Positions 1-61,192 of a stretch of DNA of 64,000 nt are shown here, piece after piece. A program made the position numbers and the translations under genes. Origin of the DNA: Octopus sinensis. Lineage: Eukaryota. The notes under the pieces were generated by a model. That model did not search any database, had not been told where the DNA came from, and worked only from the letters and a program-made list of their open reading frames with translations. How positions within the stretch are numbered: the first letter of the stretch is position 1; each line of letters opens with the position of its first letter. The stretch lies in the NCBI RefSeq assembly GCF_006345805.1, contig NC_043011.1, forward strand, positions 19,418,464-19,482,463, in the 5' to 3' direction.

Positions 1-2030
1 TCACCAGCTTCTACATCAAGGGTAGACAGGAAATTGACTTTTTTTTTGTTCGTTCCTTCTCGATCCAATTCCTGGCTCATAAGGGCCAGTTTTCCGGTTT
101 CCTCGGCGTATAGGTTCCCCACCTGGACGGGACGCTGGTCCGTTGCAGTGAGCTGCAAGATGCAGGAGGAAAGAGTGAGAGAAAGTTGTAGCGAAGGATT
201 CAGCAGAAGTTCGTCATTACCTTCTGCCGGAGCCGAGTGGAGCTTAGGTGTTTCACTCATAAACACACACATCGCCCGGTCTGGGATTCGAACCCGCGAA
301 CCCTCGATCGGAAGTCCGCTGCTCTAACCACCAGGCCATGTGCCTCCACCAGGAGATTGACTGGTGAATATCCACTGCATTACCTTAATCGAGTTCCTTT
401 TGGCAAAGGACCATTTTCCCAATGGTCACCTACTTTGTGATTTCCACTCTGTTGTTAATTATTTCAAACGTTTGTGCAATTATTCTTTCGGGTTATGATG
501 GAAAACGTTTCAGCCACAACCCTGGCTCGCCGTCGGACCTTGCCATTTCCAGTTTGGTACCTTTGTTGCTAGCTCGGTCAGTAATTAAATTGATATCCTT
601 TTTATTGTTCGGTTTCATTTCAATTATCGCCAATGTGAATTCCTTCAACCATTCATCTTATTTCTTATGCTTCCTTTCGTTATCCCAAATTTTACTCCAA
701 AACCTCTTACTTCCTTCGGTGGGGTTTCTGAATGCTGTTAAATTTTTCTGTTCAGATGCCGATAAACGCTTTTCTGATCCTTTGGAACAATTTATTGATC
801 TTATATTGTTCAATTTTACGATCATATCTCTTCATCTTAGCCGACAGCTTTATATTTAACTCCATTTCCTTTATCCTATATCTATGTTTTAGTTGCTGAT
901 AGCTCTCCTTCTTCCTGATTTCACCTTGTTTCTTTGTTTCCAGGATGTCGATATGTTTTTATATTTCGTTCATTGATTGCTTTATCCTTCTTTTCAACAA
1001 AAATTATTTTGCTACATTTACTCTGTTAAGATTTGGTTGAAGGCCTACTTTCTTTCCTATGTAAATCATACAAGATTTAATCAAGCTAACCATTCCAGTG
1101 ATATTATCCGTCTTAATGTCCTCAGTATTTTATTCACTTTGCGAGTCCATCCCCTGTGCAAAATTCTATCTACGTTCTTGAATTTATTTACTTCCATATC
1201 TAGACTTTTCTCAATGTTACCAGTGATCTCTTCGATCATTCCTCTATGGTCATTACTCAGGCATTTTACATTCTCAACACTAAAACCAAATTCATTCTCC
1301 TGGATAGCTTCATTCAAAATAATCTCCTCAGCATTCTCCCCATCCACTTTATCTTCAATCACTGTGTTTTAATTCGTAACCTATTCTTCAAGTTCTAACA
1401 ATATTATCGTTGCCTGGTCACACAGTCTCTGTTCCACCTAAGCCCTGAGTCTCTATCTCGATGCCCCGCAGTCTCTTTCTATACACTCTTATGGACTCCC
1501 TGTCATCATCAACGGTTCTGCCCAAAAGATAGCATTCCACGACATCTATATTCCTTGCCATATTTTTTTGGCAGTCGCATAATGACGACTAGACATGTGC
1601 TGCTCACCCACATGACACGGCCTCTCCTTCGACAGTGCTTCAGTAAAGATGCAGAATGACCTCAGCTGTAATTCCAATACAGAATCAGCAAATAATAGAG
1701 TAAGGAGCAGGGAGTGGACCAGCGAAAAAAACCGGATGGTGACGCAGTGCTAATTAGAAAGTGAACCGAAAAGAAGGGACTATAGAAAACGATTGTTCAT
1801 ACATTGGTTAGAGAAGGGTGTGTTAAAAGTGACTGAGCAGAGATTAATAAATTAAGGTAATGCTATTAGGAGGAGTAAGTGGATGATTGATTTGGAGCAG
1901 ATCAGAAGAGAACTAGTAACGAAAGACCAAGCAGTAAGACATAGAAACAACAACAAGAATTACAGCTCAACCAAAGGACCTAAAAAAATAATAATAATAG
2001 CGCTAGCAATAAGGAAGTGACACCTAGCAG
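1..2030 (-). mobile_element. Degenerate R4/Dong-like non-LTR retrotransposon: 5' region, N-terminal ORF and start of RT, interrupted by a SINE at 41-349
   Basis: Minus-strand pieces translate to VECYLL..RVYRKR, RFWSKIWDNE, DGEPGLWLKRF, TIGKMVLCQKE and GNAV..QSISCLPLM, matching the pre-RT and RT0-2 region of RLE-type R4/Dong elements. Many stops and frameshifts. The 5' boundary is approximate. Confidence 0.75.
41..349 (-). mobile_element. Full-length tRNA-derived SINE with 13-bp target-site duplication
   Basis: Head GTGGAGGCACATGGCCTGGTGGTTAGAGC..GGTTCGAATCCC contains Pol III A and B boxes; A-rich tail. TSD is CAGGAAATTGACT (27-39) / CAGGAGATTGACT (350-362). Confidence 0.9.
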
Positions 2031-5575: not shown

Positions 5576-5999
5576 TTTTCAAACCTTCTTTCATATATAT
5601 ATATATATATAAAGCCTATAAGTATCATAGATGCCATGGTATTAATGAATTACGGATGTTTCAGGCGATTCCATATAATCGAACAACTCGAGCATTAGAT
5701 CAATTTGAAATTCACCACCTTTCTCATATTTATAAGACCATATATGTTTTCATGATAGGGAATACTCCGATATAAAATTTTAAGAAAATTTCTCATCAGA
5801 ACTGGAGAAGAAACGAATTACATGTTTATTGCTATTATAGTAGCAGGATGAACTTAGGGAGAAATGCACTACCCTTGAAATCCTTGTTACTTGTTTGCAT
5901 TTTATTCAACTCAATGGCCAACTGTTTGGATAATACCGGAAAAACATGGAACCTCAGATTTAATACCTAATTCAACTGAGCCTTAATTATTTCTTCGTG

Positions 6000-6031
<32 letters not shown>

Positions 6032-6076
6032 GACACACACAGAGGCGCACACGCACATGCATATATATATATATAC

Positions 6077-6480
6077 ACTTTACTCTTTTACTCTTTTACT
6101 TGTTTCAGTCATTTGACTGCGGCAATGCTGGAGCACCACCTTTAGTCGAACAACTCGACCCAGGGACTTATTCTTCTGTAAGCCCAGTACTTATTCTATC
6201 GGTTTCTTTTGCCGAACCGCTAAGTGACGGGGACGTAAACACACCAACATCGGTTGTCAAGCAATGGTAGGGGGACAAACACAGACACACAAACACACAC
6301 ATACATATATATACACATATATACGACAGGCTTCTTTCAGTTTCCGTCTACCAAATCCACTCACAAAGCATTGGTCGGCCCGTGGCTATAGTAGAAGACA
6401 CTTGCCCAAGATGCCACGCAGTGAGACTGAACCCGGAACCATGTGGTTGGTTAGCAAGCTACTTACCACACAGCCACTCC
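6077..6480 (-). mobile_element. tRNA-derived SINE with internal (TG)n and a (TAAAAGAG)n tail
   Basis: Head GTGGCTGTGTGGTAAG..GGTTCAGTCTC, then TGGGCAAGTGTCTTCTACTATAGCC. Homologous to copies at 22678, 35572, 59765 and 60785. Confidence 0.85.
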
Positions 6481-13949: not shown

Positions 13950-15205
13950 TATTAAATTGTTCCGAAACTAATGGCCAATTTTAGAAACGTAATTTTATTC
14001 TGGAAAAATTAACGATAGAAATGTTTTGTTTAATTAGTCAAAGAGCCGTGAACATTTATGCATCTCTGCCATCCATCAACGAGAATATTATTGGGTTTGA
14101 TGCTAAGAAATCTTTGAAAGTTGATTCCACCTCTGGTTTGGACCTGAAAGTTTTATAACTTAAAACATGTTTAAATACTTTAAGAATGGTAGTCAGTGGG
14201 TGAAACTTCAGGAGAATAAGGAGGATGTAGTAGTCTCGTATCACAAATCTCTGAGTTTCTGCAGTGTCATTCTTGCAACGTGTGGCTTTGCATTATCGTA
14301 GAACAGAATTGGGCAACGCCGATTCACCAATGCAGGTCTCATTCTTTGCAAGTGAGCATGCATTTCAGCGATTTGATTGCAGAACCTCTGCTGTAATGCT
14401 CTGATTGGCGTCCAGAAAGCTGTAATGGATAACATCGATTGCAGACCACCAGACAGCCACCATAATCTTTTGCGCATGTAACTTTGGCTTTGAGAAATGT
14501 TTAGGGATCTTATCACGATCAGGCCATTGATCTGATCTTGTACGGTTATCATGAAAACGATCTACCTCTCGTCACAAGTGACTGTTCGGTCAAGAAAAGG
14601 ATCATTGTTGTTTCACAGAAAGAGCATCAAGTACACTTCAAAACACCGAACTTTGATTTTCTTTCAGCTCATGCGGTACCCATTTATCGAGGTTTTTCAC
14701 TTAACCAATATTCTGCAGATTGCGTGAGACCGTTGCAATACCGACACCAAATGCCTGAGACATTTCTCTGACATTTTGATGTGGGTTGTGTTCAACAATT
14801 GCCTTCATTTGTTCATTGTGAAAACTGCATGACCGTCCTCTGCCTTTCTCATCTTCAAGGTTCGCAATATCAATATGGAATATTTGAAACCACCTTCGTA
14901 CTGTGCGATCACTTGTGAACCCCCCTGCCCATGCTATGTTGATATTGACATCAGTTTAGGGAGTTCAAGCTTGTGCCCAAGCTTGAACTCATGCAAGAAA
15001 AGTAAGCGAAGGCCCATTATATTCATGATTGAGGGCACCTATGATTCAAGAATGATTTCTGTCTGAAATAAGTATAATATTATAAAAGAGCATACATCAA
15101 TTTTTAAGTATGTCGAAATTCACCTAAAATATCATTAAAATGTGATGATAAAATTGCGTTTGAAAGCACATTTAAAGCGGCTATTATTTTCGGATCAACC
15201 TAATA
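13950..15205 (-). mobile_element. Near full-length mariner transposon with a pseudogenised transposase
   Basis: Minus strand carries HEFKLGH, RRWF, EDEKGRGR, KWVPHELK, TCDER, FYDNAKPHVA and a YSPDL-like region. Imperfect TIRs with TA: TATTAAATTGTTCCGAAACTAATGGCC (13950) and the reverse complement of TATTAGGTTGATCCGAAAATAATAGCC (ends 15205); about 1.26 kb. Confidence 0.9.
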
Positions 15206-22677: not shown

Positions 22678-23110
22678 GGTGCATGCGTGGTTATGCGGCA
22701 AGAATTTTGCTTTCGAATCATATGGTTTCGGATTCAGAGACACTGCATGGTACGTGGCAAATGTATTGTATAATAGCTTCGGGCCAACTGGAGCTTTTTG
22801 TGTGTATTTCGCTCACGGAAACTGAAAGAATCTTGATGTGTATGTAAATGTATGTTTGCGTGTGCCTCTGTGTGTGTGCCTTTGTGTGTGGTTCTCTGTG
22901 TCTGTGAGTGGTGCCTTTATATTTCTGCCCACTACCCACCGCCGTTTGACAGCCGGTGTTGTTATGTTCACGTCTCCGTAACTTATCGTTTCGGTAAAAG
23001 AAACGGCAGAATAAGTACTAGGCTTAAAAGAAATAGTACTGGGACTCCTTCGTTCGGCCCCAGCATGGCAACAAAATCGTGGCTGAAACAGATAAAAGCT
23101 AATAGATAAA
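22678..23110 (+). mobile_element. Diverged SINE of the 6077/60785 family
   Basis: Degenerate tRNA head, GGAAACTGAAAGAA, internal (TG)n, GAATAAGTACTAGGCTT and GCTGAAACAGATAAAAG tail. Confidence 0.75.
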
Positions 23111-23344
23111 ACATAACAGATTTTATATACAATGCGATTAGCAAAATGTGTAACACACAATCTGAACTTCAAAACAATCCAGATAAATAAGACAGAAAAT
23201 TATACCATAAATGTTATGACATTTGTGTATATATCCAATAATATTGTAGAGAAGAAATATTATACTGGAAAACAAGACTTTCTCTCTTAAGAAAAATTAA
23301 CTAACTAAATCATATGCTAAATGTGTAAGAAACGGAATAAAACC

Positions 23345-23897
23345 GAGTTAGATCGACACCAGTACGCAACTAGTGCTTAATTTATTGACTCCGAAAGGAT
23401 AGAAGGCAAAGTCGACCTCGATGAAATTTGAACTAGAACGTAAAGACAGATGAAATACCTATTTCTTTACTACTCACAAGGGGCCAAACACAGAGAGGAG
23501 AAACAAGGAGAAACAGAGAGGAGAAACAAGGACAAACAGAGAGATTAAGTCGATTATAACGACCCCAGTGCGTAACTGGTACTTATTTAATCAACCCCGA
23601 AAGGATGAAAGGCAAAGTCGACCTCTGCGGAATTTGATCTCAGAACGTAGCGGCAGACGAAATACCTATTTCTTTATTACCCACAAAGGGCTAAACACAG
23701 AGGGGACAAACAAGGACAGACATAGGTATTAACTCGATTACATCGACGCCAGTGCGTAACTGGTACTTAATTTATCGACCCCGAAAGGATGAAAGGCAAA
23801 GTCGACCTCGGCGGAATTTGAACTCAGAACATAACGCAGACGAAATACGGCTACGCATTTCGCCCGACGTGCTAACGTTTCTGCCAGCTCGCCGCCT
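23345..23897 (-). mobile_element. Head-to-tail trimeric SINE: one complete head plus three bodies
   Basis: Head AGGCGGCGAGCTGGCAGAAACGTTAGC at 23897. The body GAGTTCAAATTCCGCCGAGGTCGACTTTGCCTTTCATCC is repeated three times. Junctions GAAATACC|TATTTCTTT lie at 23459/23460 and 23666/23667. Confidence 0.85.
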
Positions 23898-27346: not shown

Positions 27347-27660
27347 GTGGAGGCACAATAGCCCAGTGATTAGAGCAGCAGACTCCCGGTCGGAGGATTG
27401 CGGTTTCGATTCCCAGACCAAGTTCTGTGTGTGTTTATTGAGCGAAAATACCTAAAGCTCCACGAGGCTCCGGCAAGGGGTGGTGGCGACCCCTGTTGTA
27501 CTCTTTCGCCCCAACTTTCTCTCGCTCTTTCTTCCTGTTTCTTGAGTAACGCTGCGATGTACTGGCGTCCGTCCAACTAGGGGGAACACATACGCCACAG
27601 AAACCGGGAAACCGGGCCCATGAGCGTGGATAGGAGTGGAAAGGGTGCATAAATAAATAA
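27347..27660 (+). mobile_element. tRNA-derived SINE, same family as 41-349
   Basis: GTGGAGGCACAATAGCCCAGTGATTAGAGC..TTCGATTCCC head; GAAACCGGGAAACCGGGCCCATGAGC near the 3' end; (TAAA)n tail. Confidence 0.85.
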
Positions 27661-37454: not shown

Positions 37455-38790
37455 TCATTAGATAAGTGAACTGATTTCTTACGATATTTTCATAGTAACT
37501 TGTTTTGATACGTGAATAAATTTGATATTTTTCTGGACGTGATGACTGAGCGCCAAGTAGAGACCTAAATATTATCACTTTAAACACGTGCCCATCTTCG
37601 CCTTCCACAAAGTGTCCCAAGCTGCCAAATCTGCTTGAAGCATTTGTGCTGTATACGAAGTCCCTATAATTAGAAGGCCTCACAGACAACCTTTACATGA
37701 CAGTTCAAGAAATGGAAATTTGAATTGTCTCAGCCGACGTATTTATTTGAATATAATCGCCTGAATGGTCTTCACCACGGAAATCTACACCGATGGACAT
37801 GGAATTTGTATCAGCAGATGGTACGTTTTCATGATACCATCACACGATACGCGATGTGTAACGTATAAAAGCTATGTGCGTACATGCCAAATGCTCTGAA
37901 CAAAAGAACCAAACTTCACTGGTTCTCTATCAACACCAGCTTGCTTGCTCAACGCTAGGCAATTCTAGAAAGCAAACGGATCTTTTACAACATCGTCACC
38001 GATAGTGAAAATATAATGATGCCTTTATAGTAATATGAGGCATAAGGATGGATAGCTCATTCCCTTCAAGCTACAACTTGAGTAAAACTAGTGACTCATA
38101 CATGCAAGTGAATTATCTGAATTTTTGGGTAGAGGTAATTCTGATAAACAACAAGTGGTCAATGCAGACCCCTACGCTCTGAAAATGCAACGTCTGAATG
38201 AGTCAATTCTGTTCAAACGCCACGACTGGCTGCACAGCGTATATCTTCAACATTCCAACGTTTATGAGTCTTTACCTCGAGTGAAAATGCTATCCAAGAA
38301 TTTGGCTGCGAATCTCTACTGCATCACTCATATTCTCTTGATATAATAAAAAAAAAAAGACTCCGCCGGTTACGACGACGAGGGTCCCAGCTGATACGAT
38401 CAACGGAACAGCTTGCTCGTGAAATTAACATGCAAATGGCTGAGCATTCCACAGACACGTGTACCCTTAACGTAGTTCTCGGGAATAATCAGCGTGACAC
38501 AGAGAGTGACAAGGCTGACCCTTTGAAATACAAGTACAACTCATTTGTGCCAGCTGAGTGGACTGGAGCAACGTGAAATAAAGTGTCTTGCTCAAGGACA
38601 CAACGCGTCGCCGGGAATCGAACTCACAATCTTACCATCATGAGCCGAATGCCCTAACCACTAAGCCACGCGCCCTCACATCTTGATATAATACCTTCAG
38701 ATAATAAACTTCTCCGGGCACTCTCTGAGAGCCGGTGAAAAGTTTCTTTAAAAAATAACATGGCACTAAAAACGCGGCTCGATGGAATTT
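37455..38790 (+). mobile_element. Old, heavily degraded mariner interrupted by a SINE
   Basis: SICAVYE..FKKWKF, MPNALN, IVTDSE, NADPYALKMQRLNESI..YLQHSN, and LLHHSYSLD|IIPSD (the YSPDL region, split by the SINE). Boundaries approximate. Confidence 0.65.
38359..38679 (-). mobile_element. Full-length tRNA-derived SINE with 13-bp TSD
   Basis: Head GTGAGGGCGCGTGGCTTAGTGGTTAGGGC..GAGTTCGATTCCC. TSD TCTTGATATAATA at 38336-38348 and 38681-38693. Confidence 0.92.
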
Positions 38791-39687
38791 TCCGAGTCAT
38801 AATCCAATGATTTCTACTAGCAAGAAGTGCATGTAGAATGTTGTCATGAAGGAGAATATATTATTGACTGAAATGTTAAAGACGTTGATGAGAAGTAAGG
38901 ATTAGAATAAATGAAAAGTAAAACGACTATATTTACCTGAGAACCCAATGTTTGTGTTGTATTTATATCGTATTTGTAAATATAGTAGGTCTTGATTTTT
39001 TTCTAGATTCCCTGCAATGGCTGGGAGTATGTCCACGCTACTCTAAAATTCTGGAGATCGTTAACACCCTGCTCACAAAGGCAGCAGATATATGGAAATG
39101 ATATTTACCAAAGCAATGTATCTTCCTTACAAATAATGACTGATATAATAGAGTATTTATTTAAATACATCATACGCTAGTGCAATTAACCGTTTTTAGT
39201 TAAAAAGTTTTCGAATATATGAATATCTAATATCACTTCGTTGTATCTACGAAATTTGTATGAGCATAATATGGGAAAGTAGACGTCTTTGTTTATATAT
39301 GGGAAAGTGTTGCGTCTTTGTTTATATATAGGTATGTCAGTATGGTATGTATAGGCGGAGTGAAATTGAAATGAAACGCAAATTATTAACTGAAATTTAT
39401 TTCTCGGATTTTCAGATATTTCTTCGGAATAAATATTCAATATAATTGAATACAATTTCATTTGATTTCACATGTAAATGGATATTACTTTGGAGTGAAG
39501 TATTGCAACGTATTGTCAAATAGGGCCTACTTTATTAGCAGACAGGTATAGTGAATATACATTATTAGCAAATGTCTGGAAGACATTAGATTATTAAATA
39601 TATATATATATATATATTAAATATATTATTAAATATATAATGTATATATATATATATATAATATATATATATATATTATATATATAT

Positions 39688-39994
39688 ATCACATGATCAC
39701 GTGACCGACCAGACCATCAGATATTGTTACACAACGCTGGTCACAATGCATTCGCATTGTTTTAGCCTTTGAATGACGCCACACCGCTGGCTAAGCGGGC
39801 AGGCCAACAGAAGAAAGAGTGGGAGAAAGAGTGGTGAAAGAGTACAAGAGGGATCACCCCCCCCTGCTGGAACCTCGTGGAGATTTTAGATGTTTTCGCT
39901 CAATAAACACTCACAACGCCCGGTCTGAGAATCGAAGCCGCGATCCTACGACCGCGAGTCCGCTGCCCTAACCACTAGGCCATTGCGCCTCCAC
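39688..39994 (-). mobile_element. tRNA-derived SINE: same head as the 41/27347 family, different 3' tail
   Basis: GTGGAGGCGCAATGGCCTAGTGGTTAGGGC head; tail GGTCTGGTCGGTCACGTGATCATGTGAT is shared with the fragment at 54679-54798. Confidence 0.88.
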
Positions 39995-40001
39995 ATATAT
40001 A

Positions 40002-40050
<49 letters not shown>

Positions 40051-40384
40051 CGAGAGGTCAATACCTCGAAACTCGATTCCGTGTGTATCATAAGTTGAAG
40101 ACGGGAAGGATGACTTCCCTTTGCAAATACTGACAGGACACAAATAGTGTGTCTATGGCCAGCTGGAGGAGTGTGTCCTCCTGGGGCTAAAAACTACAGT
40201 AGCATCCACCCTTAGGGGTTAGCCATATTGAAATGGCAAAAATACGTCACGATGTGTTACCGCTACTGTATATAACTCACTTTGATATTTATCATTGTTT
40301 GATTTCACTTTTTCATTATCAGCGACAGTGGACGCCGGAAAAAGTATAAGTATTTGTGAAGGAAATCTAATTCTCGGCGACAAC

Positions 40385-40445
40385 TATGATTGTCACACGC
40401 TGACGAGAGGTCAATACCTCGAAACTCGAGTCCGTGTGTATCATA
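40385..40445 (+). ncRNA. Intact type I hammerhead ribozyme; predicted cleavage after C40432
   Basis: CACACG-CTGACGA-GAGGT(CAAT)ACCTC-GAAA-CTCGAG-TC/CGTGTG. Stem I 6 bp plus TATGAT/ATCATA extension, stem II 5 bp, all conserved core nucleotides, GUC site. Confidence 0.93.
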
Positions 40446-40737
40446 AGTTGAAGACGGGAAGGATGACTTCCCTTTGCAAATACTGACAGGACACAAATAG
40501 TGTGTCTATGGCCAGCTGGAGGAGTGTGTCCTCCTGGGGCTAAAAACTACAGTAGCATCCACCCTTAGGGGTTAGCCATATTGAAATGGCAAAAATACGT
40601 CACGATGTGTTACCGCTACTGTATATAACTCACTTTGATATTTATCATTGTTTGATTTCACTTTTTCATTATCAGCGACAGTGGACGCTGGAAAAAGTAT
40701 AAGTATTTGTGAAGGAAATCTAATTCTCGGCGACAAC

Positions 40738-40798
40738 TATGATTGTCACACGCTGACGAGAGGTCAATACCTCGAAACTCGAGTCCGTGTGTATCATA
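40738..40798 (+). ncRNA. Second intact type I hammerhead ribozyme; predicted cleavage after C40785
   Basis: Identical motif 353 bp downstream of the first. Confidence 0.93.
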
Positions 40799-40956
40799 AG
40801 TTAAAGACGGGAAGGATGACTTCCCTTTGCAAATACTGACAGGACACAAATAGTGTGTCTATGGCCAGCTGGAGGAGTGTGTCCTCCTGGGGCTAAAAAC
40901 TACAGTAGCATCCACCCTTAGGGGTTAGCCATATTGAAATGGCAAAAATACGTCAC

Positions 40957-41006
<50 letters not shown>

Positions 41007-43811: not shown

Positions 43812-45089
43812 TACACTTGCGGGACTCCACACAGACATGCAGGAAGTAAATAGACACTTTTAAGTTTCATTTTTAAAAATTTAATACACAAAGCGAATAA
43901 GTGAAAGGTAATCGATAAGTAGTTGACATTCCTTTTGCAGTTTTTAATTCAGAACTATTTTTGGTATCGAACAGCTGAGCTTTGTGATTGTCTCTTGTGG
44001 AATTTCTGCCCACTTTTCTCGCAACAATCGAAATAATTCATCTTTAGATGTAGGTTTCTGTCAAGTTCTTCGTATAGCTCTATCTAGTATGCTCCAACGA
44101 TTTTCAATTTGGTTCATGACAGAAGATTGGCTCGGCCAAGGAAACTTTTTGATCCCATTTTCAGTCAACCATTGTTGATTCCTTTTCGCTGTGTGGCATG
44201 GAACTCCATCGTCCATGAATAAAACACATTTTTCGTTATGTTGTAGCCTTAAGCAAGGGCTACTTCCAATGGGAATACATTGGAAGTAGCCCTTGCTTAA
44301 GTATTTCGATGTATTTTGCAGAGTTTATGGTTCCAACATATTCGATCAACTCAGAACGACCACTGCTGGTGAGAGCTCCCCTTACCATTACAGAGTCGTT
44401 TCGAATCAAATTCTTGATTGGGAAGACTCCAGAACCAAACACGTTCACTGTCTGAAAATAATGCAAATCTGGATTCATCTGGGAATATCTCTATACCAAA
44501 ATGAACTGGATTTTTCTGACATTTCTTTATCCCATTTCTTTCTTTTCATGATACTAATTGGTTGAAGGAGAGGTTTTCTTCTAGCTGCTAGTCCATAATA
44601 AAATGCTTATGCAGATATATAACATACGTTCTTGGACTAACATCTAGCTGTTTTGCAATGTGAGACGCCTTCGAATAGGGTTCGTTTTCCACAATTCTCT
44701 TCAAATAGCGAAGCTTCCTTTCCGAGGGCCCAGGTTGGCCGGGACGAGAATCTGCTGACTCTTTACGTTGGCTTTTGAATTGCACTATAATTCTATTAAC
44801 AGCAAGAAGAGGAATTTGAAGATTTTCGGCAATCTTTCGCTGGTTAAGACCAGCCTCAGATTGCCCAACAATACGATTTCTTTGAAATTCTGACAGTTCT
44901 GCTGAATATTTTGTGCGTGGCATGGCTACTCTTCACAAAGGTTCAATATAATGGCACCTGGAATGAAAAAGAATAATTACATTGTAAATTCTACACTGCT
45001 GCAAACATATTAAGACGCTTAAATAAGAAATTTTGAAAATTAAAGGTGTTTATTTACTTCCTACATGTCTGTGTGCAGTTCAAAATGTA
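43812..45089 (-). mobile_element. Tc1-like transposon with a pseudogenised transposase
   Basis: ORF 44588-44923 gives the HTH region ([20 protein letters not shown]..). Downstream: SVMVRGALTSSG, FMDDGVPCHTAK, WPSQS..NQIEN.W. TIR core CACACAGACATG.AGGAAGTAAATA.ACAC is present at both ends. Confidence 0.88.
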
Positions 45090-45938: not shown

Positions 45939-47500
45939 TTAAAATATGGTCCGTTGTCTTCTGCTGAACCGGGGTCATCCCTTAACCCTATGGTCACAGC
46001 AGGTCCTCATCTTATGAAGAGTACACGGCGTAAAATGTGTGCGGTACCTAGCAGCACTATTTTCTGAAGTTCTCCCACGTTAACACTGCAAGAAAGTTTG
46101 TTGAGCCGCTATCAAGGCCCTTTTTAACTAGCCCTAACGCCCTAATAACACCGGTGCTGTGTTGCTTTTCATTCCCCACATCTTGGTCACTTCTATTTCT
46201 AGGTCTTTGTACTTAAATAACTTCTTAACTTCTTTCATGGACACATTTCTCTCTGATGGTACTGTCACATTTATCATTAAGTATTTCATTTTCGCCCGTA
46301 TTTGCCTTGATTTCTTTTTTCGGTGTTGATTGGCATGTCCCAGAGTACTATTACATCATCTTTTCCGGTCACAGTTTCTGGTTTATGCTGCTACCATCTT
46401 TCTGAAGTTGGAAGCTGGTAGTGTTTACATATCTTCCAATCTATATATTGCGCTACTGTATCGTGTCTATGAGTATATTCAATTTTTGCAAGCACTGTGC
46501 ATCCAGTTAAGGTGTGGTCCCCTGTTTCATCCTGCTCATGACACATTCTGCATTTTGGGTCAGTGCCATCGTTCATTATTTTGTTGTGGTAAGCCATTGT
46601 TGCCAAGCTTTGATCTTGTGCTGCTATGATAAAACCTTTAGTCCTGAGATCGACTTTGCCTTTCATCCTTCAGGGTCGATTGAATAAGTACCAGTTACGC
46701 ACTGGGCCGATGTAATCGACTTAATCTCTTTGTCTGTCCTTGTTTGTCCACTCTATGTTTAGCCCCTTGCGGGCAATAAAGAAATAAAAATATTACATTA
46801 AACACATTTGGTAGCGCTGCGTGTTAAATATCGAGACCATGTGATTGGTGTCCCACCATGCCCTGGTGGCTTTCGGTTTCTTGTTTAGCAGCATGTATCC
46901 AACTTCGTCTGTTGTTATGGCATCCCAAGTTTGTACGGAAGTTGTTTTCATTGCTTTTCACAATCTCGTCTCTGGTAATTCCTTAGCTGTCCATATTCCA
47001 CCTTAAAAAGTTCTCTAATTCTCTTGTTGCTTCGGCATTGATTTCTATATCTTGCATTTCTGAAGAAAATCATTTTGTGCTGAGGCAGAACTGTTTGTTG
47101 TATTCAAAGAATCGCTGTCATTTTTAACGTTCTACAATTTTTTGCCGTAGATTTTCTGTTTCGAGCGTTCTTTGATTTTAGGCATTCTTTTTTAAGTTAT
47201 ATTATGCAGTATTTGTCACACTTTCCTTTATTCAGTCTTGGTATTGCGTTATTGATTTCATTAAAAATTGAGATTAATTTTGTTTCGTTTTCTGCATTTT
47301 TGTTTCCCATGATGTTTTCTCGGTGTTTCATATTTCTTTATGACTACGACTAGCTTAGCGATATTCATGTGTGCTACTTTCAATGAAGTCTCCTATTGTT
47401 ATTCTTATGTTTGTTGCTATTTTGTTGTTACTTTTAAATTTGGGAGATACTTTCATTGATTCATGCTCATTGTTTTATATTATTCGTATTATTACACCGT
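45790..47500 (-). mobile_element. R4/Dong-like LINE remnant with (TAA)n(TGA)n tail; RT core missing
   Basis: FIIAAQDQSLAT..KCRMCHEQDETGDHTLTGC..EYTHRHDTVAQYIDWKIC (CCHC knuckle), followed by degenerate RLE motifs and the tail at 45790-45940. Pre-RT sequence lies at 46790-47500. Confidence 0.82.
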
Positions 47501-49938: not shown

Positions 49939-51237
49939 ACTTTGATACTTTGATAGGTTTCGGCCATTATTGGCCCAGGCCATGTCTAACTTAATAGCAC
50001 CACCTGGTGAAGTCTTTCAAGTCAGAATTTGGGCACTATGGCCCACTCAAGTAGAGAGTTATTGTTTACAGAGACATATCCGGGTGTAGGGGGTTTATCC
50101 GGGATTTCTTGAAGGAATCTGTCCAAAGACGTCTTGAACCCTATAGGGTCTGTTTCTGTTTTAATGTGTTTTGGTGTAATGTTAAAGAGAGCGGGGCCAA
50201 TTGAGGTGAAATAATTGTGCCGTATTGTTGTTATGAGATGAGAGTGCGATTTTTGTTTTGGGCGAATGGCACGTGGCCCAAGCCTTGGATGTACCTTAAA
50301 GAAGGTGATGCTAACATCATTTGGGCAATGCTGATGGAATATTTTCCACATCATGCAGATGATGTAGCGCTCACGGCGACGTTGGAGAGAATAAAGTTTT
50401 AGCTTTTCTAGTCGACCCCAATAGTCGAGGCCTGTCATGACATCTATCTTTTTTGTGATTGCCCTTTGAGGTGCTTCAACTTTTATGATACTTTGTTTTG
50501 TGTGGGGAGACCACAGTGGACAACAGTATTCAAGGTGGGGTCGGGCAAAAGTGGAGAAGAGAAGGATAATGGTGTGGATATCTCTCGACTGGAAAGTTCT
50601 GAGAGTCCAGGAACACATTCTGCGGGCCATGTCAACTTTGGTGTGTATATGAGTGGCCCAGCTTATGTTGTTGTCCACAATTACTCCCAAGTCTCTGATG
50701 TTGTTGGATGCCACGAGAGTTTCACCTGAAGGAAGGGAGTATGGGAGTTTCAGGGCATCCTCTTTTCCAAAGTGGATTAACTCAAATTTATCCTCGTTCA
50801 GCAGCATATTGTTTTTTTCTGCCCATTGGATAACAGCCAGTAGATCTGACTGAAGGCATGTCCGGTCACTCGCCTCATTTATGACCTTTTGGAGCTTGGA
50901 ATCATCTGCAAAGATTTTTATGTTGCTGCGCTTGATGATGTCATTGACGTCATTAATGTAGATGATGAAAAGAAGTGGGCCCAACACAGTGCCTTACTGA
51001 CTTTGGCTGGGCTTGATTTTTACCCCTTCAACTACAACATGTTGAGATCTGTCTTTCAGGAAACACTTGATTCATTTCAGTAACTTTCCAGAGACACCAA
51101 TGTTGGATAGTTTTTTCAATAGGAGCTTGTGATCAACCCTGTCGAAGGCCTTGCTGAAATCAAGGTAGATGACATCGGTGTTGGAGCCCTCTCCCAAATC
51201 TTTCAAAATATCATCAAAGTGATGCAGGAGCTGCGTT
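49939..51237 (-). mobile_element. 5'-truncated CR1-group LINE: RT core and C-terminus, well preserved
   Basis: [56 protein letters not shown]; 321-aa open stretch at 50022-50987. Ends in a GGCC hairpin and (TATCAAAG)x2. Confidence 0.92.
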
Positions 51238-51274
51238 ATATAAATATATATGTATGTATGTATATATATGTATA

Positions 51275-51398
<124 letters not shown>

Positions 51399-51472
51399 TA
51401 TATATGCACACATATATATATAAACGTACATATATATACATATATATATATGTATGTATGTATATATTTATA

Positions 51473-54678: not shown

Positions 54679-54798
54679 TTGGCCTGTTCGCTTAGCCAGC
54701 GGGGTGGCGTAACTTGATGGCTAAAACAATACGAAGCGCATTGTGACCAGCGATTTGTAACAACAACTGATAGCCTGGTCGGTCACGTGTGACGTGAT
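54679..54798 (+). mobile_element. 5'-truncated SINE tail of the 39688 family, in (TA)n
   Basis: GGCCTG.TCGCTTAGCCAGCGG..GGTCGGTCACGTG. Confidence 0.8.
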
Positions 54799-58115: not shown

Positions 58116-60502
58116 GCCGTGTGAAAGTAATAATGCGAGATATTTAGCATGTGTACACCTGAGTATCTAGTACACAGCTGTTTTTTTTCTTTGTTATATG
58201 TTGTCGTTTTTCTTTTTGCTTATTATACCTCTTGTTCTTTAGTAGCAGACAAGATAGTTTATTATTAAAGGCTTTGCAGCCGTAATATTCTGTGAACAAC
58301 TATCACATTTATAATTCACCATCCATATTTGAGATGCGGGGAATGATTTACAAGGATTTAGGCGAGATTTTATGCTGGTTGAGGAAGAATTCGGAAGCTT
58401 TCTAGATGGCCATTAACTATGTTTGCCAATAAAGTTTCGTAGTTTTCATATTGTTGTAGCAAGTTGCTATCATATCTGTTAATATTGACAAGAAGTAAAT
58501 AGCAGTTACTAGTTCCTGGTGTCAATGGTACATTGACTCGTGATATGTCTTAGAGATGTTGCTTTCAGTTTTCTATCTATATATCTGGGAAGCATGGCGG
58601 TGAGCTTGCAGATACGTTATCACGCCGGGCGAAATGCATAGCTGTATTTTGTCTGTCTTTACGTTCTGAATTCAAAGTTCCCCGAGGTCGACTTTGCCTT
58701 TCATCATTTCGGGAACGATGAATTAAGTACCAGTAGTGTACTGGGGTCAATATAATCGACTGGGACCCTCTCCCAAAAATATTGGACCTTTTGCCTATAT
58801 TTGAAATGTATATATAGGGGAGGCTTGTAACAAACACTATTAAAATACCGAATGTTATTTTTGTCTAGCCCATTCTATTTTCTCTCAGATCCCGTATTTA
58901 TCTGATTCTTTTATTGTTGTTTGGTATCCATTTCTTTCGCGTAATTTAAGCATCATACCTAAAAACTCATATTGTTTTCTGACTTATTTTTCATGGATAA
59001 AATTGCCTTGCATTTATCTTCTATGCACATTACAAATGTTTGACGTATGCAGGGAAGATATTTCAACAAGAATAAGCTGCTACTGCCAGTAAATCTTGTG
59101 ATAATTTACAAGATGCAAAATGTTGTTGATGTACATATTGTTTTTCTTCTATCATCAATAACCGAATATATATGTGATCAATGACATTCTATGTACAGAA
59201 ACAAAACAGATTATTTTTTCCCACTTTCATTATATATGTATAGCTCATGCAAGTATCATTTCCCCTTGAAGGGAACTGAGTAGTTATAGGAGAGATTTGT
59301 CTCCTATTACGAGCAGATGAATCGACTGCATAAAATTCTTTCTTGTAGTTACGTTATTGTATATATCTGGAAATGTGTAGAATTAAAATATTTTGCTAAA
59401 TGAAGTATGTGTGATGCAATATATATTACTTTACTACCCACAGGGTGCCAAACACAGAGGAGACAAACAAGGACAGACAAACGGATTAAGTCGATTACAT
59501 CTACCCCAGTGCGTGACTGGTACTTAATGTATCGACCCCGAAAGGATGAAAGGCAAAGCCGACCTTGGCGGAATTTGAACTCAGAACGTAACGGCAGACG
59601 AAATACGGCTACACATTTCGCCCGGCGTGCTAACGTTTCTGCCAGCTCACCGACCTAGTGTGATGTAATATTTAAATTCCGAATGATACCAACAACAACT
59701 TCAAATTGTTGACTGCAAAAGCAATACCAACTAGTGGTTGAATGAGATATATTCTTTTATTCTTTGGATTCTTTTATTTGTTATTCTTTTAATTGTTTCA
59801 GTCATTTGACTACGGTCACACTAGAGCACCGCTTAGTAAGCCTCGTACTTATTCTATCGCCTTTTTACCGAACAGCTATCTTACGTAGACATATATACTC
59901 CAGTATCGGTTAAGTTTAGAAATAAAATATCTTTCGGTCATTAATAATAATTTGCGATTATGGATTCGATGCAATTTATGGGGTTATATTTCTAGCCTGG
60001 TTTTTCAGAAATATTACTAGAGATTCGTGCATAAAAAGTAAACAAGATCTAAACTTTACATTGATTATAATATATTCAAATTGACTGTGCCGGTGAGCAA
60101 GCTGAATCCGTAGCACGCCGGGTAAAACGCATAGCGGCATTTCGTCGGTCTTTACGTTCTGAATTTTATTTTCCGCTGACGCTAACTTTGCCTTTTATCT
60201 TATCGGTGTCGATAAACCAAGTAGCAGTTGAGTACTGGAGTTGACTTAACCTCTCTATCAAAATTCATGGCCTTCAACCAAAATTTGAAACCAATATAAA
60301 TTGATAGACTAAGGTGTCGTGCTGACAGAATCATTAGCATGCCGAGGAAAATGCATTGCAGAAATTTGTCGTTACGTTCTCAGATGAAATTCCGCCGAGA
60401 TCGGCTTTGCTTTTATTCTTTCGCGGACGCTAAAATATGTTCCGGTTGAACATTGGGGTAAATGTCACGGACTTACAACCTCCCTGAAATTGCGGTCCTT
60501 AT

Positions 60503-60784: not shown

Positions 60785-60980
60785 ACTCTTTTACTTGTTT
60801 CAGTCATTTGACTGTGGCCATCCTGGAGCAACGCCTATAGACGACGAAATCGACCCCATAACTTATTTTTTGTGAGCCTAGTACTTATTCTATCGGTCTC
60901 ATTTGCCGAACCACTATGTTACTGGGACGTAAAAACACTAGCATCGATTGTCAAGCGATGTTTGGGGGGACACAAATACG

Positions 60981-61028
<48 letters not shown>

Positions 61029-61192
61029 AATACGACGGGCTTCTTTCAGTTTCCGTCTACCAAATCAACTTACAAGGCTTTGGTCGGCCCGAGGCTAAAG
61101 TAGAAGAAACTTGCCCAAGGTGCTATGTAGTGGGACTGAATCCGGAATCATGTGGTTGGTAAACAAGCTACTTATCACACAGCCACTTCTTC
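60785..61192 (-). mobile_element. Full-length SINE of the 6077 family
   Basis: Colinear with 6077-6480. A 3' fragment of the same family lies at 59765-59915. Confidence 0.85.

What the first reader, a model, noticed from the sequence alone, without database searches (positions are those of the whole stretch)
40048..40956. Young non-LTR retrozyme-like array: 353-bp tandem units joined by intact hammerhead ribozymes
Seen in sequence: 2.6 head-to-tail copies of a 353-bp non-coding unit with about 3 substitutions, flanked by (TA)n. The junctions at 40385-40445 and 40738-40798 are complete type I hammerheads (CUGACGA, GAAA, GUC site, perfect stems I and II). The first copy is dead: C3 and the 5' strand of stem I are missing, and G40077 is T. 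Established: tandem 150-400-bp repeats with type I hammerheads define metazoan non-LTR retrozymes, which yield monomeric linear and circular RNAs and are thought to be mobilised by Penelope-like RTs. Inference: transcription would release exactly 40433-40785 (353 nt) with 5'-OH and 2',3'-cyclic phosphate ends, ligatable by RtcB. The array could be the product of rolling-circle reverse transcription of such a circle. I cannot tell whether this family has been described.
Basis: partly seen in the sequence, partly recalled or inferred. Interest (0 to 1): 0.92.

Follow-up and report, generated by a model that had tools for sequence, protein, structure and literature searches.

The report
Young hammerhead-ribozyme tandem repeat (retrozyme)
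A 909-bp stretch holds 2.6 nearly identical copies of a 353-bp non-coding unit, each junction carrying a self-cleaving hammerhead ribozyme, which is a clean but ordinary example of the "non-LTR retrozyme" repeats already known from many animals.

Summary
Tandem Repeats Finder reports 40048-40956, period 353, 2.6 copies, 99% matches and no indels. There are exactly three substitutions, and (TA)n abuts both ends. The two unit junctions carry identical full-length matches to Rfam Hammerhead_1 (32.2 bits; curated cut-off 34; E 4e-4 for the whole window). All core nucleotides are present. Cleavage is predicted after 40432 and 40785, which would release a 353-nt RNA.

Three things are new here:
- Helix III is only 2 bp plus a tetraloop, inside an 8-nt palindrome.
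- The predicted lowest-energy fold of a transcript spanning both ribozymes is a textbook double hammerhead.
- The monomer folded as a circle is far more stable than shuffled sequence (z = -7.3).

The locus meets the published operational criteria for an active metazoan non-LTR retrozyme. The (TA)n flanks fit the known microsatellite preference of Penelope-like elements, but one locus gives only p of about 0.05.

I could not test self-cleavage, expression, dispersed copies or the host species. No relatives turned up in any collection available.

The parts
39995..40048 (.). Upstream (AT)27 microsatellite abutting the array; probably the left half of the insertion target
   Evidence: TRF; sequence; joined flanks give one continuous (TA)n tract of about 100 bp
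40048..40956 (+). Whole tandem array: 2.6 units of 353 bp (32 + 353 + 353 + 171 nt), non-coding
   Evidence: TRF; blastn of the monomer and comparison in register; no ORF longer than 63 aa; no protein homologues
40041..40088 (+). Dead 5'-truncated hammerhead at the array edge (C3 replaced by A at 40047, 5' strand of stem I replaced by TA repeat, G16.2 to T at 40077)
   Evidence: Rfam 27 bits; sequence
40080..40432 (+). First full 353-bp unit; it cannot be released as a monomer because the ribozyme at its 5' side is dead
   Evidence: blastn 99.7% identity to the monomer
40394..40438 (+). Hammerhead 1, type I, complete core; cleavage after C40432. Stem I continues distally (40381-40390 with 40440-40450) across a UGU/U internal loop
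   Evidence: Rfam RF00163 32.2 bits, model 1-45; descriptor; fold
40433..40785 (+). The only monomer that can be released (353 nt) between the two cleavage sites; GC 42%; predicted to be a highly self-paired circle
   Evidence: Circular MFE -116.1 kcal/mol vs shuffles -81.3 +/- 4.7, z -7.3, 63% paired
40747..40791 (+). Hammerhead 2, identical to hammerhead 1; cleavage after C40785
   Evidence: Rfam 32.2 bits; descriptor
40424..40431 (+). Palindrome ACUCGAGU (helix III region of hammerhead 1), predicted to pair with 40777-40784 in a double hammerhead
   Evidence: MFE pair table of 40350-40850
40777..40784 (+). Palindrome ACUCGAGU (helix III region of hammerhead 2), partner of 40424-40431
40786..40956 (+). 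3'-truncated third unit (171 nt), ending at ...ACGTCAC; would be the start point of reverse transcription under a target-primed model
   Evidence: blastn; sequence
40957..41003 (.). Downstream (TA)23.5 microsatellite abutting the array; probably the right half of the insertion target
   Evidence: TRF
40662..40666 (+). T5 run on the ribozyme strand of each unit (also 40309-40313); a potential RNA polymerase III stop inside the unit

Best explanation
This is a young insertion of a non-autonomous retroelement of the metazoan non-LTR retrozyme type. It is a 353-bp non-coding unit repeated 2.6 times head to tail, with a type I hammerhead ribozyme spanning each unit junction, and it sits inside a (TA)n microsatellite. 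Proposed working: + strand transcription across the array gives an RNA with two intact hammerheads 353 nt apart. Each has a helix III of only 2 bp, so the two pair through their 8-nt palindromes into a double hammerhead, with the stems I cross-paired. Both sites are then cut (after 40432 and 40785), and one 353-nt RNA with 5'-OH and 2',3'-cyclic phosphate ends is released. By analogy with coral, mussel and axolotl retrozymes, a tRNA ligase of the RtcB type closes this RNA into a compact circle. A reverse transcriptase from a Penelope-like element then copies the circle several times round at a nick in a (TA)n tract, which yields a new multimeric array truncated at both ends, like this one. Shown here: the array, its near-identity, the ribozyme motif, the cut-site geometry, the predicted double-hammerhead fold, the exceptional predicted stability of the monomer, and the microsatellite flanks. 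Inferred: self-cleavage, circularisation, the source of the reverse transcriptase and the rolling-circle origin.
For: Array and identity. Hammerhead: full-length Rfam match with every core nucleotide; the descriptor finds 2 sites in the window and 0 in 300 random sequences. These are the only ribozyme-like hits on either strand of the window. Stem I (6 bp, then a 3/1 internal loop, then more helix) and stem II with its loop resemble the Rfam type I consensus (alignment; fold). Double hammerhead: in the MFE structure of 40350-40850 (-170.7 kcal/mol, z -6.6) both cores are unpaired, both stem II hairpins are local, 40424-40431 pairs with 40777-40784, and the stems I are cross-paired. Dimeric cleavage is documented for newt and axolotl type I hammerheads with a weak helix III (PMC7229834, PMC6155905). 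Monomer as a circle: z -7.3, 63% paired, GC 42% against 33% for the window, which matches the 'highly self-paired', <45-50% GC description in PMC7229834. Non-coding: the longest ORF is 63 aa and there are no homologues. The operational criterion for an 'active retrozyme' (TRF array, at least two consecutive complete HHRs, HHR MFE < -5 kcal/mol) is met. (TA)n is a documented preferred target of Penelope-like elements of the Naiad and Neptune groups (PMC8557442), and both array ends lie in (TA)n. Retrozymes have been linked to the pseudo-LTRs of Penelope-like elements (bioRxiv 10.64898/2026.07.22.740005).
Against: The Rfam score is 1.8 bits below the family's gathering threshold, so a standard scan misses it. 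There is no second copy of the unit in the 64-kb window. No relative was found in the metagenome, viral or prokaryote-genome scans, in protein-level searches or in paper texts, so membership of a dispersed family is unproven. Those collections hold little animal DNA, so this absence is weak evidence. No reading frame of a Penelope-like element was seen among the window's ORFs; the reverse-transcriptase fragments present look like LINE-type, from motifs read by eye over weak Pfam hits. (TA)n covers 4.5% of the window, so landing in it by chance has p of about 0.05 for a single locus. No promoter was identified, and each unit has a T5 run on the ribozyme strand. Near-identity of the units could also come from recent unequal exchange rather than from rolling-circle copying.
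Confidence: 0.78

Rival explanations
1. A local tandem duplication or small satellite seed. A single hammerhead-bearing sequence was duplicated in place by replication slippage or unequal exchange, helped by the flanking microsatellite. It has no RNA-mediated mobility now, so the locus is an inert relic even if the ribozyme can still cut.
For: Only one locus is seen in 64 kb and no relatives were found elsewhere. The region is rich in microsatellites and prone to slippage. No promoter was identified.
Against: The array starts and ends at unrelated positions of the unit and abuts (TA)n exactly on both sides, as expected for an insertion into one microsatellite. The monomer's predicted stability (z -7.3) and an intact hammerhead with peripheral elements point to selection at the RNA level, which an inert duplication does not explain. 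All comparable arrays studied so far are expressed as RNA circles (PMC7229834).
Confidence: 0.12
2. A remnant of an autonomous Penelope-like element: tandem pseudo-LTRs left after loss of the internal coding region, rather than a separate non-autonomous family.
For: Penelope-like elements carry type I hammerheads in their pseudo-LTRs, form tandem or partial-tandem insertions and favour (TA)n (PMC8557442, PMC6155905). Retrozyme units are phylogenetically close to pseudo-LTRs.
Against: No reverse-transcriptase or GIY-YIG reading frame lies in or next to the array. Hammerheads of Penelope-like elements are usually minimal variants that lack helix III and the loop contacts (PMC6155905). This one has a 6-bp stem I with an internal loop, a 5-bp stem II and a 2-bp helix III, like retrozyme hammerheads. 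A clean array of 2.6 units with three substitutions is not what an internal deletion would leave.
Confidence: 0.07
3. An artefact: the copy number comes from misassembly, or the hammerhead match is chance.
For: Tandem repeats flanked by microsatellites are hard to assemble. The Rfam score is below the gathering threshold.
Against: The three substitutions between units show that distinct copies were resolved. The descriptor gives 0 hits in 300 random windows against 2 here, both at the same position of the unit. The whole-window E-value is 4e-4 per site.
Confidence: 0.03

Closest known systems
Metazoan non-LTR retrozymes (Cervera & de la Pena 2020, PMC7229834), e.g. the roughly 350-390-bp units of the mussel Mytilus galloprovincialis and the 220-240-bp units of the coral Acropora millepora
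   Same: Head-to-tail array of a unit of a few hundred bp. One type I hammerhead per unit. Non-coding, low GC (42%) and a highly self-paired monomer. Helix III of 2 bp plus a tetraloop, which that paper describes as typical of invertebrate hammerheads. The unit size is almost the same as in the mussel.
   Different: Sequence relationship to any published unit could not be tested. No expression or cleavage data. The invertebrate hammerheads tested in that paper (coral, mussel) cleaved in single-repeat constructs, whereas this one has a perfect 8-nt palindrome and a predicted double-hammerhead ground state. Only a 2.6-mer is seen.
Newt satellite 2 and axolotl HHR_Amex1/Amex2 retrozymes
   Same: Type I hammerhead with a weak helix III capped by a palindromic tetraloop. 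Efficient cleavage only as a dimer in transcripts with two ribozymes. Monomers of 330-350 nt.
   Different: The amphibian HHR_Amex1 has a single base pair in helix III; here there are two. Amphibian arrays reach about 10^5 copies; the copy number here is unknown. The host here looks like an invertebrate, AT-rich and microsatellite-rich genome, though that is unverified.
Schistosoma mansoni Sm-alpha hammerhead repeat
   Same: From my memory of the crystallised construct: stem I of 6 bp followed by a 3-nt/1-nt internal loop, and a stem II loop of the xxAAUA type (Rfam consensus CAAAUA; UCAAUA here if the U-A pair is opened). These are the elements that make the loop-loop tertiary contact.
   Different: The resemblance is in architecture only and the contact was not modelled. 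Sm-alpha is a dispersed SINE-like family.
Pseudo-LTRs of Penelope-like elements (Penelope/Poseidon, Neptune; Naiad for the target preference)
   Same: Type I hammerhead in a terminal repeat, tandem insertions, and (TA)n as a frequent target (PMC8557442). They are the proposed source and mobiliser of retrozymes.
   Different: There is no reverse-transcriptase or endonuclease gene here. Hammerheads of Penelope-like elements are mostly minimal, and Naiads lack canonical hammerheads altogether.
Plant LTR retrozymes and hammerhead viroids (Avsunviroidae)
   Same: Hammerhead-processed RNA of a few hundred nucleotides that is circularised. The double-hammerhead mechanism is as in ASBVd.
   Different: Those carry type III hammerheads, LTR/PBS/PPT in the plant retrozymes, and ribozymes in both polarities in the viroids. 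Here there is a type I hammerhead on one strand only and a DNA copy in the genome.

Membership tests
Metazoan non-LTR retrozyme | Head-to-tail tandem repeat with a unit of about 150-450 bp | tested here: met
   Period 353, 2.6 copies, 99% matches
Metazoan non-LTR retrozyme | Type I hammerhead with a complete catalytic core in the repeat units; at least two consecutive complete motifs (operational criterion of bioRxiv 10.64898/2026.07.22.740005) | tested here: met
   Two identical full-length RF00163 matches 353 nt apart; descriptor hits; HHR region MFE -23.6 kcal/mol; criterion text. Caveat: 32.2 bits against the Rfam gathering score of 34
Metazoan non-LTR retrozyme | No protein-coding capacity; no LTR, PBS or PPT | tested here: met
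   Longest ORF 63 aa. Six-frame query found no homologue at E <= 0.01. The array has no terminal repeats other than its own units. PBS and PPT were not searched for specifically
Metazoan non-LTR retrozyme | Low GC (<45-50%) and a stable, highly self-paired monomeric RNA | tested here: met
   GC 42%; circular MFE -116.1 kcal/mol, z -7.3 against 200 dinucleotide shuffles, 63% paired
Metazoan non-LTR retrozyme | Multicopy family dispersed in the genome | not testable with these tools
   No other copy in the 64-kb window. No animal-genome collection is available. Scans of metagenome, viral and prokaryote collections were negative
Metazoan non-LTR retrozyme | Self-cleavage of the transcript, and accumulation of linear and circular monomers in vivo | not testable with these tools
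   Only the predicted fold and geometry are available
Metazoan non-LTR retrozyme | Co-occurrence with autonomous Penelope-like elements in the same genome | tested here: inconclusive
   No reading frame of a Penelope-like element among the window's ORFs. The reverse-transcriptase fragments at 50022-51431 and 46394-46669 give only weak Pfam hits (RVT_1, zf-RVT) and look LINE-type from motifs read by eye. A 64-kb window says little about a whole genome
Hammerhead ribozyme type I (Rfam RF00163) | Core C3 U4 G5 A6 N7 G8 A9, G12 A13 A14, A15.1-U16.1 and H17, with three helices and helix I open | tested here: met
   CUGACGA / GAA / A...U / C are all present; stem I 6 bp, stem II 5 bp, helix III 2 bp
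Hammerhead ribozyme type I (Rfam RF00163) | Score at or above the curated gathering threshold | tested here: not met
   32.2 bits against 34. The shortfall is small and comes from the divergent stem II sequence and helix III, not from the core
Penelope-like element (autonomous) | ORF encoding a reverse transcriptase plus a GIY-YIG endonuclease between pseudo-LTRs | tested here: not met
   No such ORF in or beside the array

The most novel reading that the evidence does not exclude
This is a very recent integration (three substitutions in 909 bp) that preserves both junctions of a multimeric cDNA made by rolling-circle reverse transcription of a 353-nt hammerhead circle, inserted into a (TA)n tract. 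If many sister insertions in the same genome show the same (TA)n targeting and variable entry and exit points on the circle, the family would give direct genomic footprints of the still hypothetical retrozyme integration step. It would also tie that step to a Penelope-like GIY-YIG endonuclease that prefers (TA)n.
Probability: 0.25. Interest if true: 0.5.

Novelty: new member of a known kind. Interest (0 to 1): 0.3.

Why it matters
Retrozymes are among the few genome-encoded sources of abundant ribozyme-processed circular RNAs in animals, and how they integrate is still a hypothesis. A young array with both junctions intact, two working-looking ribozymes and a microsatellite target is a convenient test case for three things: in vitro cleavage (monomer against dimer), detection of the circle, and the target preference of the mobilising enzyme. 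By itself the locus adds one more family to a class already reported from cnidarians, molluscs, arthropods and amphibians. It does not change what is known about the class.

Tried and rejected
None of the searches for relatives returned a hit.
- Exact look-up of the 63-aa junction ORF.
- A 711-aa six-frame pseudo-protein of the unit against 5.8 billion proteins.
- Two metagenome scans with specific and then degenerate hammerhead patterns.
- One viral scan and one GTDB genome scan.
- A full-text paper search for sequence strings from the ribozyme and the neighbouring SINE.

These collections contain little animal DNA, so the negatives do not show that the unit is unique.

Attempts to name the host also failed.
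- The LINE reverse-transcriptase ORF gave a best hit of 68% identity to an unnamed 934-bp contig of assembly GCA_024449705.1. The nearest named hits were ctenophore proteins at 42-51%.
- The assembly accession appears in no searchable paper or supplement.
- Exact look-ups of window ORFs found nothing.
- A six-frame query built from the SINEs found nothing.

Readings considered and rejected:
- The miRNA, snoRNA and other Rfam hits around the array and across the window sit on TA/CA microsatellites far below their gathering scores. They are artefacts.
- I checked whether the flanking (TA)n belongs to the neighbouring SINE. Other copies of that SINE in the window have no (TA)n at the same end.
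- A ribozyme on the minus strand, which would indicate a viroid-like symmetric replicon: none was found.
- The bacterial promoter and terminator scan was not used, because the sequence is clearly eukaryotic.

Full report
**1. The observation**

- Tandem Repeats Finder reports one array at 40048-40956 with period 353, 2.6 copies, 99% matches, no indels and score 1797. It is bracketed by (AT)27 at 39995-40048 and (TA)23.5 at 40957-41003 (sequence).
- Sliding the array by 353 nt shows exactly three differences: 40077 T/40430 G, 40336 C/40689 T (a CpG to TpG change) and 40450 G/40803 A.
- The array is composed of 32 nt (unit positions 322-353), two full units (40080-40432 and 40433-40785) and 171 nt of a third.
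- blastn finds no other copy of the unit in the 64-kb window.

**2. The ribozymes**

- A default Rfam scan at gathering thresholds reports nothing in the window.
- With E-value reporting, Hammerhead_1 (RF00163) matches 40394-40438 and 40747-40791 on the + strand. Each match covers the whole model (1-45 of 45) at 32.2 bits, 1.8 bits below the curated 34. E is 7.8e-6 in the 1.2-kb search and 4.2e-4 in the whole-window search.
- These, plus the truncated first copy at 27 bits, are the only ribozyme-like hits on either strand. Every other hit is a miRNA or snoRNA model landing on TA or CA microsatellite far below its threshold.
- The motif reads CACACG / CUGACGA / GAGGU-CAAU-ACCUC / GAA / A-C-UCGA-G-U / C^ / CGUGUG. 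All invariant core positions are present, stem I has 6 bp and stem II has 5 bp.
- A descriptor I wrote (stem I >=5 bp, CUGANGA, stem II >=4 bp, GAA, A15.1...U16.1, H17) finds exactly these two sites in the window and none in 300 random 64-kb sequences with the same first-order composition.
- The first copy has A at the C3 position (40047), TA repeat in place of the 5' strand of stem I, and T for G16.2 at 40077. It is dead, as stated.

**3.

- Helix III is minimal: A15.1-U16.1 and C-G, closed by a UCGA tetraloop, all inside the perfect 8-nt palindrome ACUCGAGU.
The MFE is -170.7 kcal/mol, against -125.3 +/- 6.9 for shuffles (z -6.6).
- The pair table shows a textbook double hammerhead:
  - both CUGACGA cores, both GAA triplets and C17 are unpaired;
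  - both stem II hairpins are local;
  - 40424-40431 pairs with 40777-40784 as an 8-bp helix III;
  - the stems I are cross-paired (40394-40399 with 40786-40791, and 40433-40438 with 40747-40752).
- Dimeric cleavage is the documented mode for newt and axolotl type I hammerheads with a weak helix III, and for ASBVd (PMC7229834, PMC6155905).
- PMC7229834 describes a 2-bp helix III plus tetraloop as typical of invertebrate hammerheads, and the coral and mussel repeats it tested cleaved in single-repeat constructs. Whether this ribozyme needs the dimer is therefore an open experimental point. The thermodynamic prediction favours the dimer whenever two copies are on one RNA.
- This locus has exactly two intact ribozymes, so it can form one double hammerhead and release one monomer.

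**4. The monomer as an RNA**

- Folded as a circle, the 353-nt unit has an MFE of -116.1 kcal/mol, against -81.3 +/- 4.7 for 200 dinucleotide shuffles (z -7.3). None of the shuffles reached the observed value, and 63% of bases are paired.
- Stem I continues across a UGU/U internal loop into a long helix that joins the two ends of the unit.
- GC is 42% against 33% for the window.
- The unit has no ORF longer than 63 aa. A six-frame query found no protein relative among 5.8 billion sequences.
- These properties match the published description of retrozyme RNAs: small, non-coding, GC below 45-50% and highly self-paired (PMC7229834).

**5. Surroundings**

- The window is AT-rich, repeat-dense animal-type DNA.
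- Perfect (TA)>=6 runs number 128 and cover 4.5% of the window.
- A tRNA-like SINE lies directly upstream at 39760-39996 on the minus strand. Other copies are at 224-349, 27347-27539, 38615-38681 and 54679-54726. None of those has (TA)n at the corresponding end, so the microsatellite is not part of the SINE.
- Fragments of Tc1/mariner transposases lie at 44064-44932 and 14244-14955. A LINE-type reverse transcriptase lies at 50022-51431 and a zf-RVT fragment at 46394-46669.
- No reading frame of a Penelope-like element was seen.
- Joining the two flanks gives one uninterrupted (TA)n tract of about 100 bp. The simplest reading is a single insertion into one microsatellite.
- Penelope-like elements of the Naiad and Neptune groups are reported to prefer (TA)n, which often hides their target-site duplications (PMC8557442).
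- With (TA)n at 4.5% of the sequence, one insertion landing there has a chance probability of about 0.05. This is suggestive only.

**6. Mechanism**

Shown here: the array, the ribozyme motif, the cut-site geometry, the predicted double hammerhead, the structured monomer and the microsatellite flanks.

Inferred from work on coral, mussel and axolotl (PMC7229834) and from the phylogenetic link between retrozymes and the pseudo-LTRs of Penelope-like elements (bioRxiv 10.64898/2026.07.22.740005):
- + strand transcription;
- double cleavage to a 353-nt RNA with 5'-OH and 2',3'-cyclic phosphate ends;
- closure by an RtcB-type ligase;
- reverse transcription by an enzyme from a Penelope-like element, running several times round the circle at a nicked (TA)n site.

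Such a process would give an array with arbitrary start and end points on the unit and with all units identical at birth. That is what is seen: an end at unit position 171, a start at position 322, and three later substitutions, one of them a CpG transition. Unequal exchange could also keep the units identical, so this is not proof.

The polymerase is unknown. Each unit has a T5 run on the ribozyme strand (40309, 40662), which argues mildly against RNA polymerase III. No AATAAA signal is present.

**7. Comparison with known families**

- The locus meets every sequence-level criterion for a metazoan non-LTR retrozyme. That includes the operational rule of the 2026 preprint: a TRF array, at least two consecutive complete hammerheads, and HHR MFE below -5 kcal/mol.
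- Not testable here: dispersal in the genome, expression, cleavage, and co-occurrence with Penelope-like elements.
- I file it as a new member of a known kind.
- The unit size is nearly that of the mussel units (350-390 bp). The weak palindromic helix III recalls the amphibian ribozymes.
- The stem I and loop 2 layout resembles the Schistosoma type I hammerhead. That comparison rests on my memory and on the Rfam consensus, and the tertiary contact was not modelled.

**8. What could not be done**

- No collection of animal genomes was available.
- All searches for relatives were negative.
- The host species remains unknown. The best match of the LINE ORF is 68% identity to an unnamed contig of GCA_024449705.1, which I could not assign to an organism.
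- A literature search for hammerhead ribozymes in cephalopods returned only the paper on Penelope-like elements and a twister survey.

**9. Verdict**

Two changes apply: the double-hammerhead refinement, and the caveat that all RNA-level and mobility steps are inferred by analogy. This is a tidy example of a well-described class, so interest is about 0.3.

Noticed in passing
window 39760-39996 (-); also 224-349 (-), 27347-27539 (+), 38615-38681 (-), 54679-54726 (+): A tRNA-like SINE family (head GGAGGCGCAATGGCCTAGTGGTTAGGG...) with at least five copies at 73-83% identity. One copy lies directly upstream of the (TA)n that holds the array. ARAGORN calls no tRNA gene in the window and Rfam gave no tRNA hit at E <= 0.05.
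   Followed up: partly
window 50022-51431 (-): A LINE-type reverse-transcriptase reading frame (FADD motif; weak Pfam RVT_1 hit), split by a (TA)n microsatellite near 51000-51070. The best database match is 68% identity to an unnamed contig of assembly GCA_024449705.1; the nearest named hits are ctenophore proteins.
   Followed up: partly
window 44064-44932 (-) and 14244-14955 (-): Decayed Tc1/mariner-type transposase fragments (Pfam DDE_3, HTH_SB and HTH_32 hits).
   Followed up: partly
window 46394-46669 (-): An isolated zf-RVT (zinc-binding tail of a reverse transcriptase) fragment, probably the 3' end of another LINE copy.
   Followed up: no
window 23454-23729 (+), 58580-58864 (-), 59404-59655 (+); related pieces at 5980-6267, 22816-23199, 60812-61159: A second interspersed repeat family, recognisable from shared pseudo-peptides in the ORF translations (for example ...TPVRNWYL..RKDERQSRP..NSER..). 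It is unclassified.
   Followed up: no
whole window: Extreme microsatellite load: 128 perfect (TA)>=6 runs make up 4.5% of the sequence, with many CA/TG-rich tracts besides. These produce dozens of spurious sub-threshold Rfam hits to mir-297, mir-1277, mir-3149 and sno_ZL1.
   Followed up: yes
window 39269-39329: A short 29-bp tandem repeat, 2.1 copies, 87% matches. Significance unknown.
   Followed up: no
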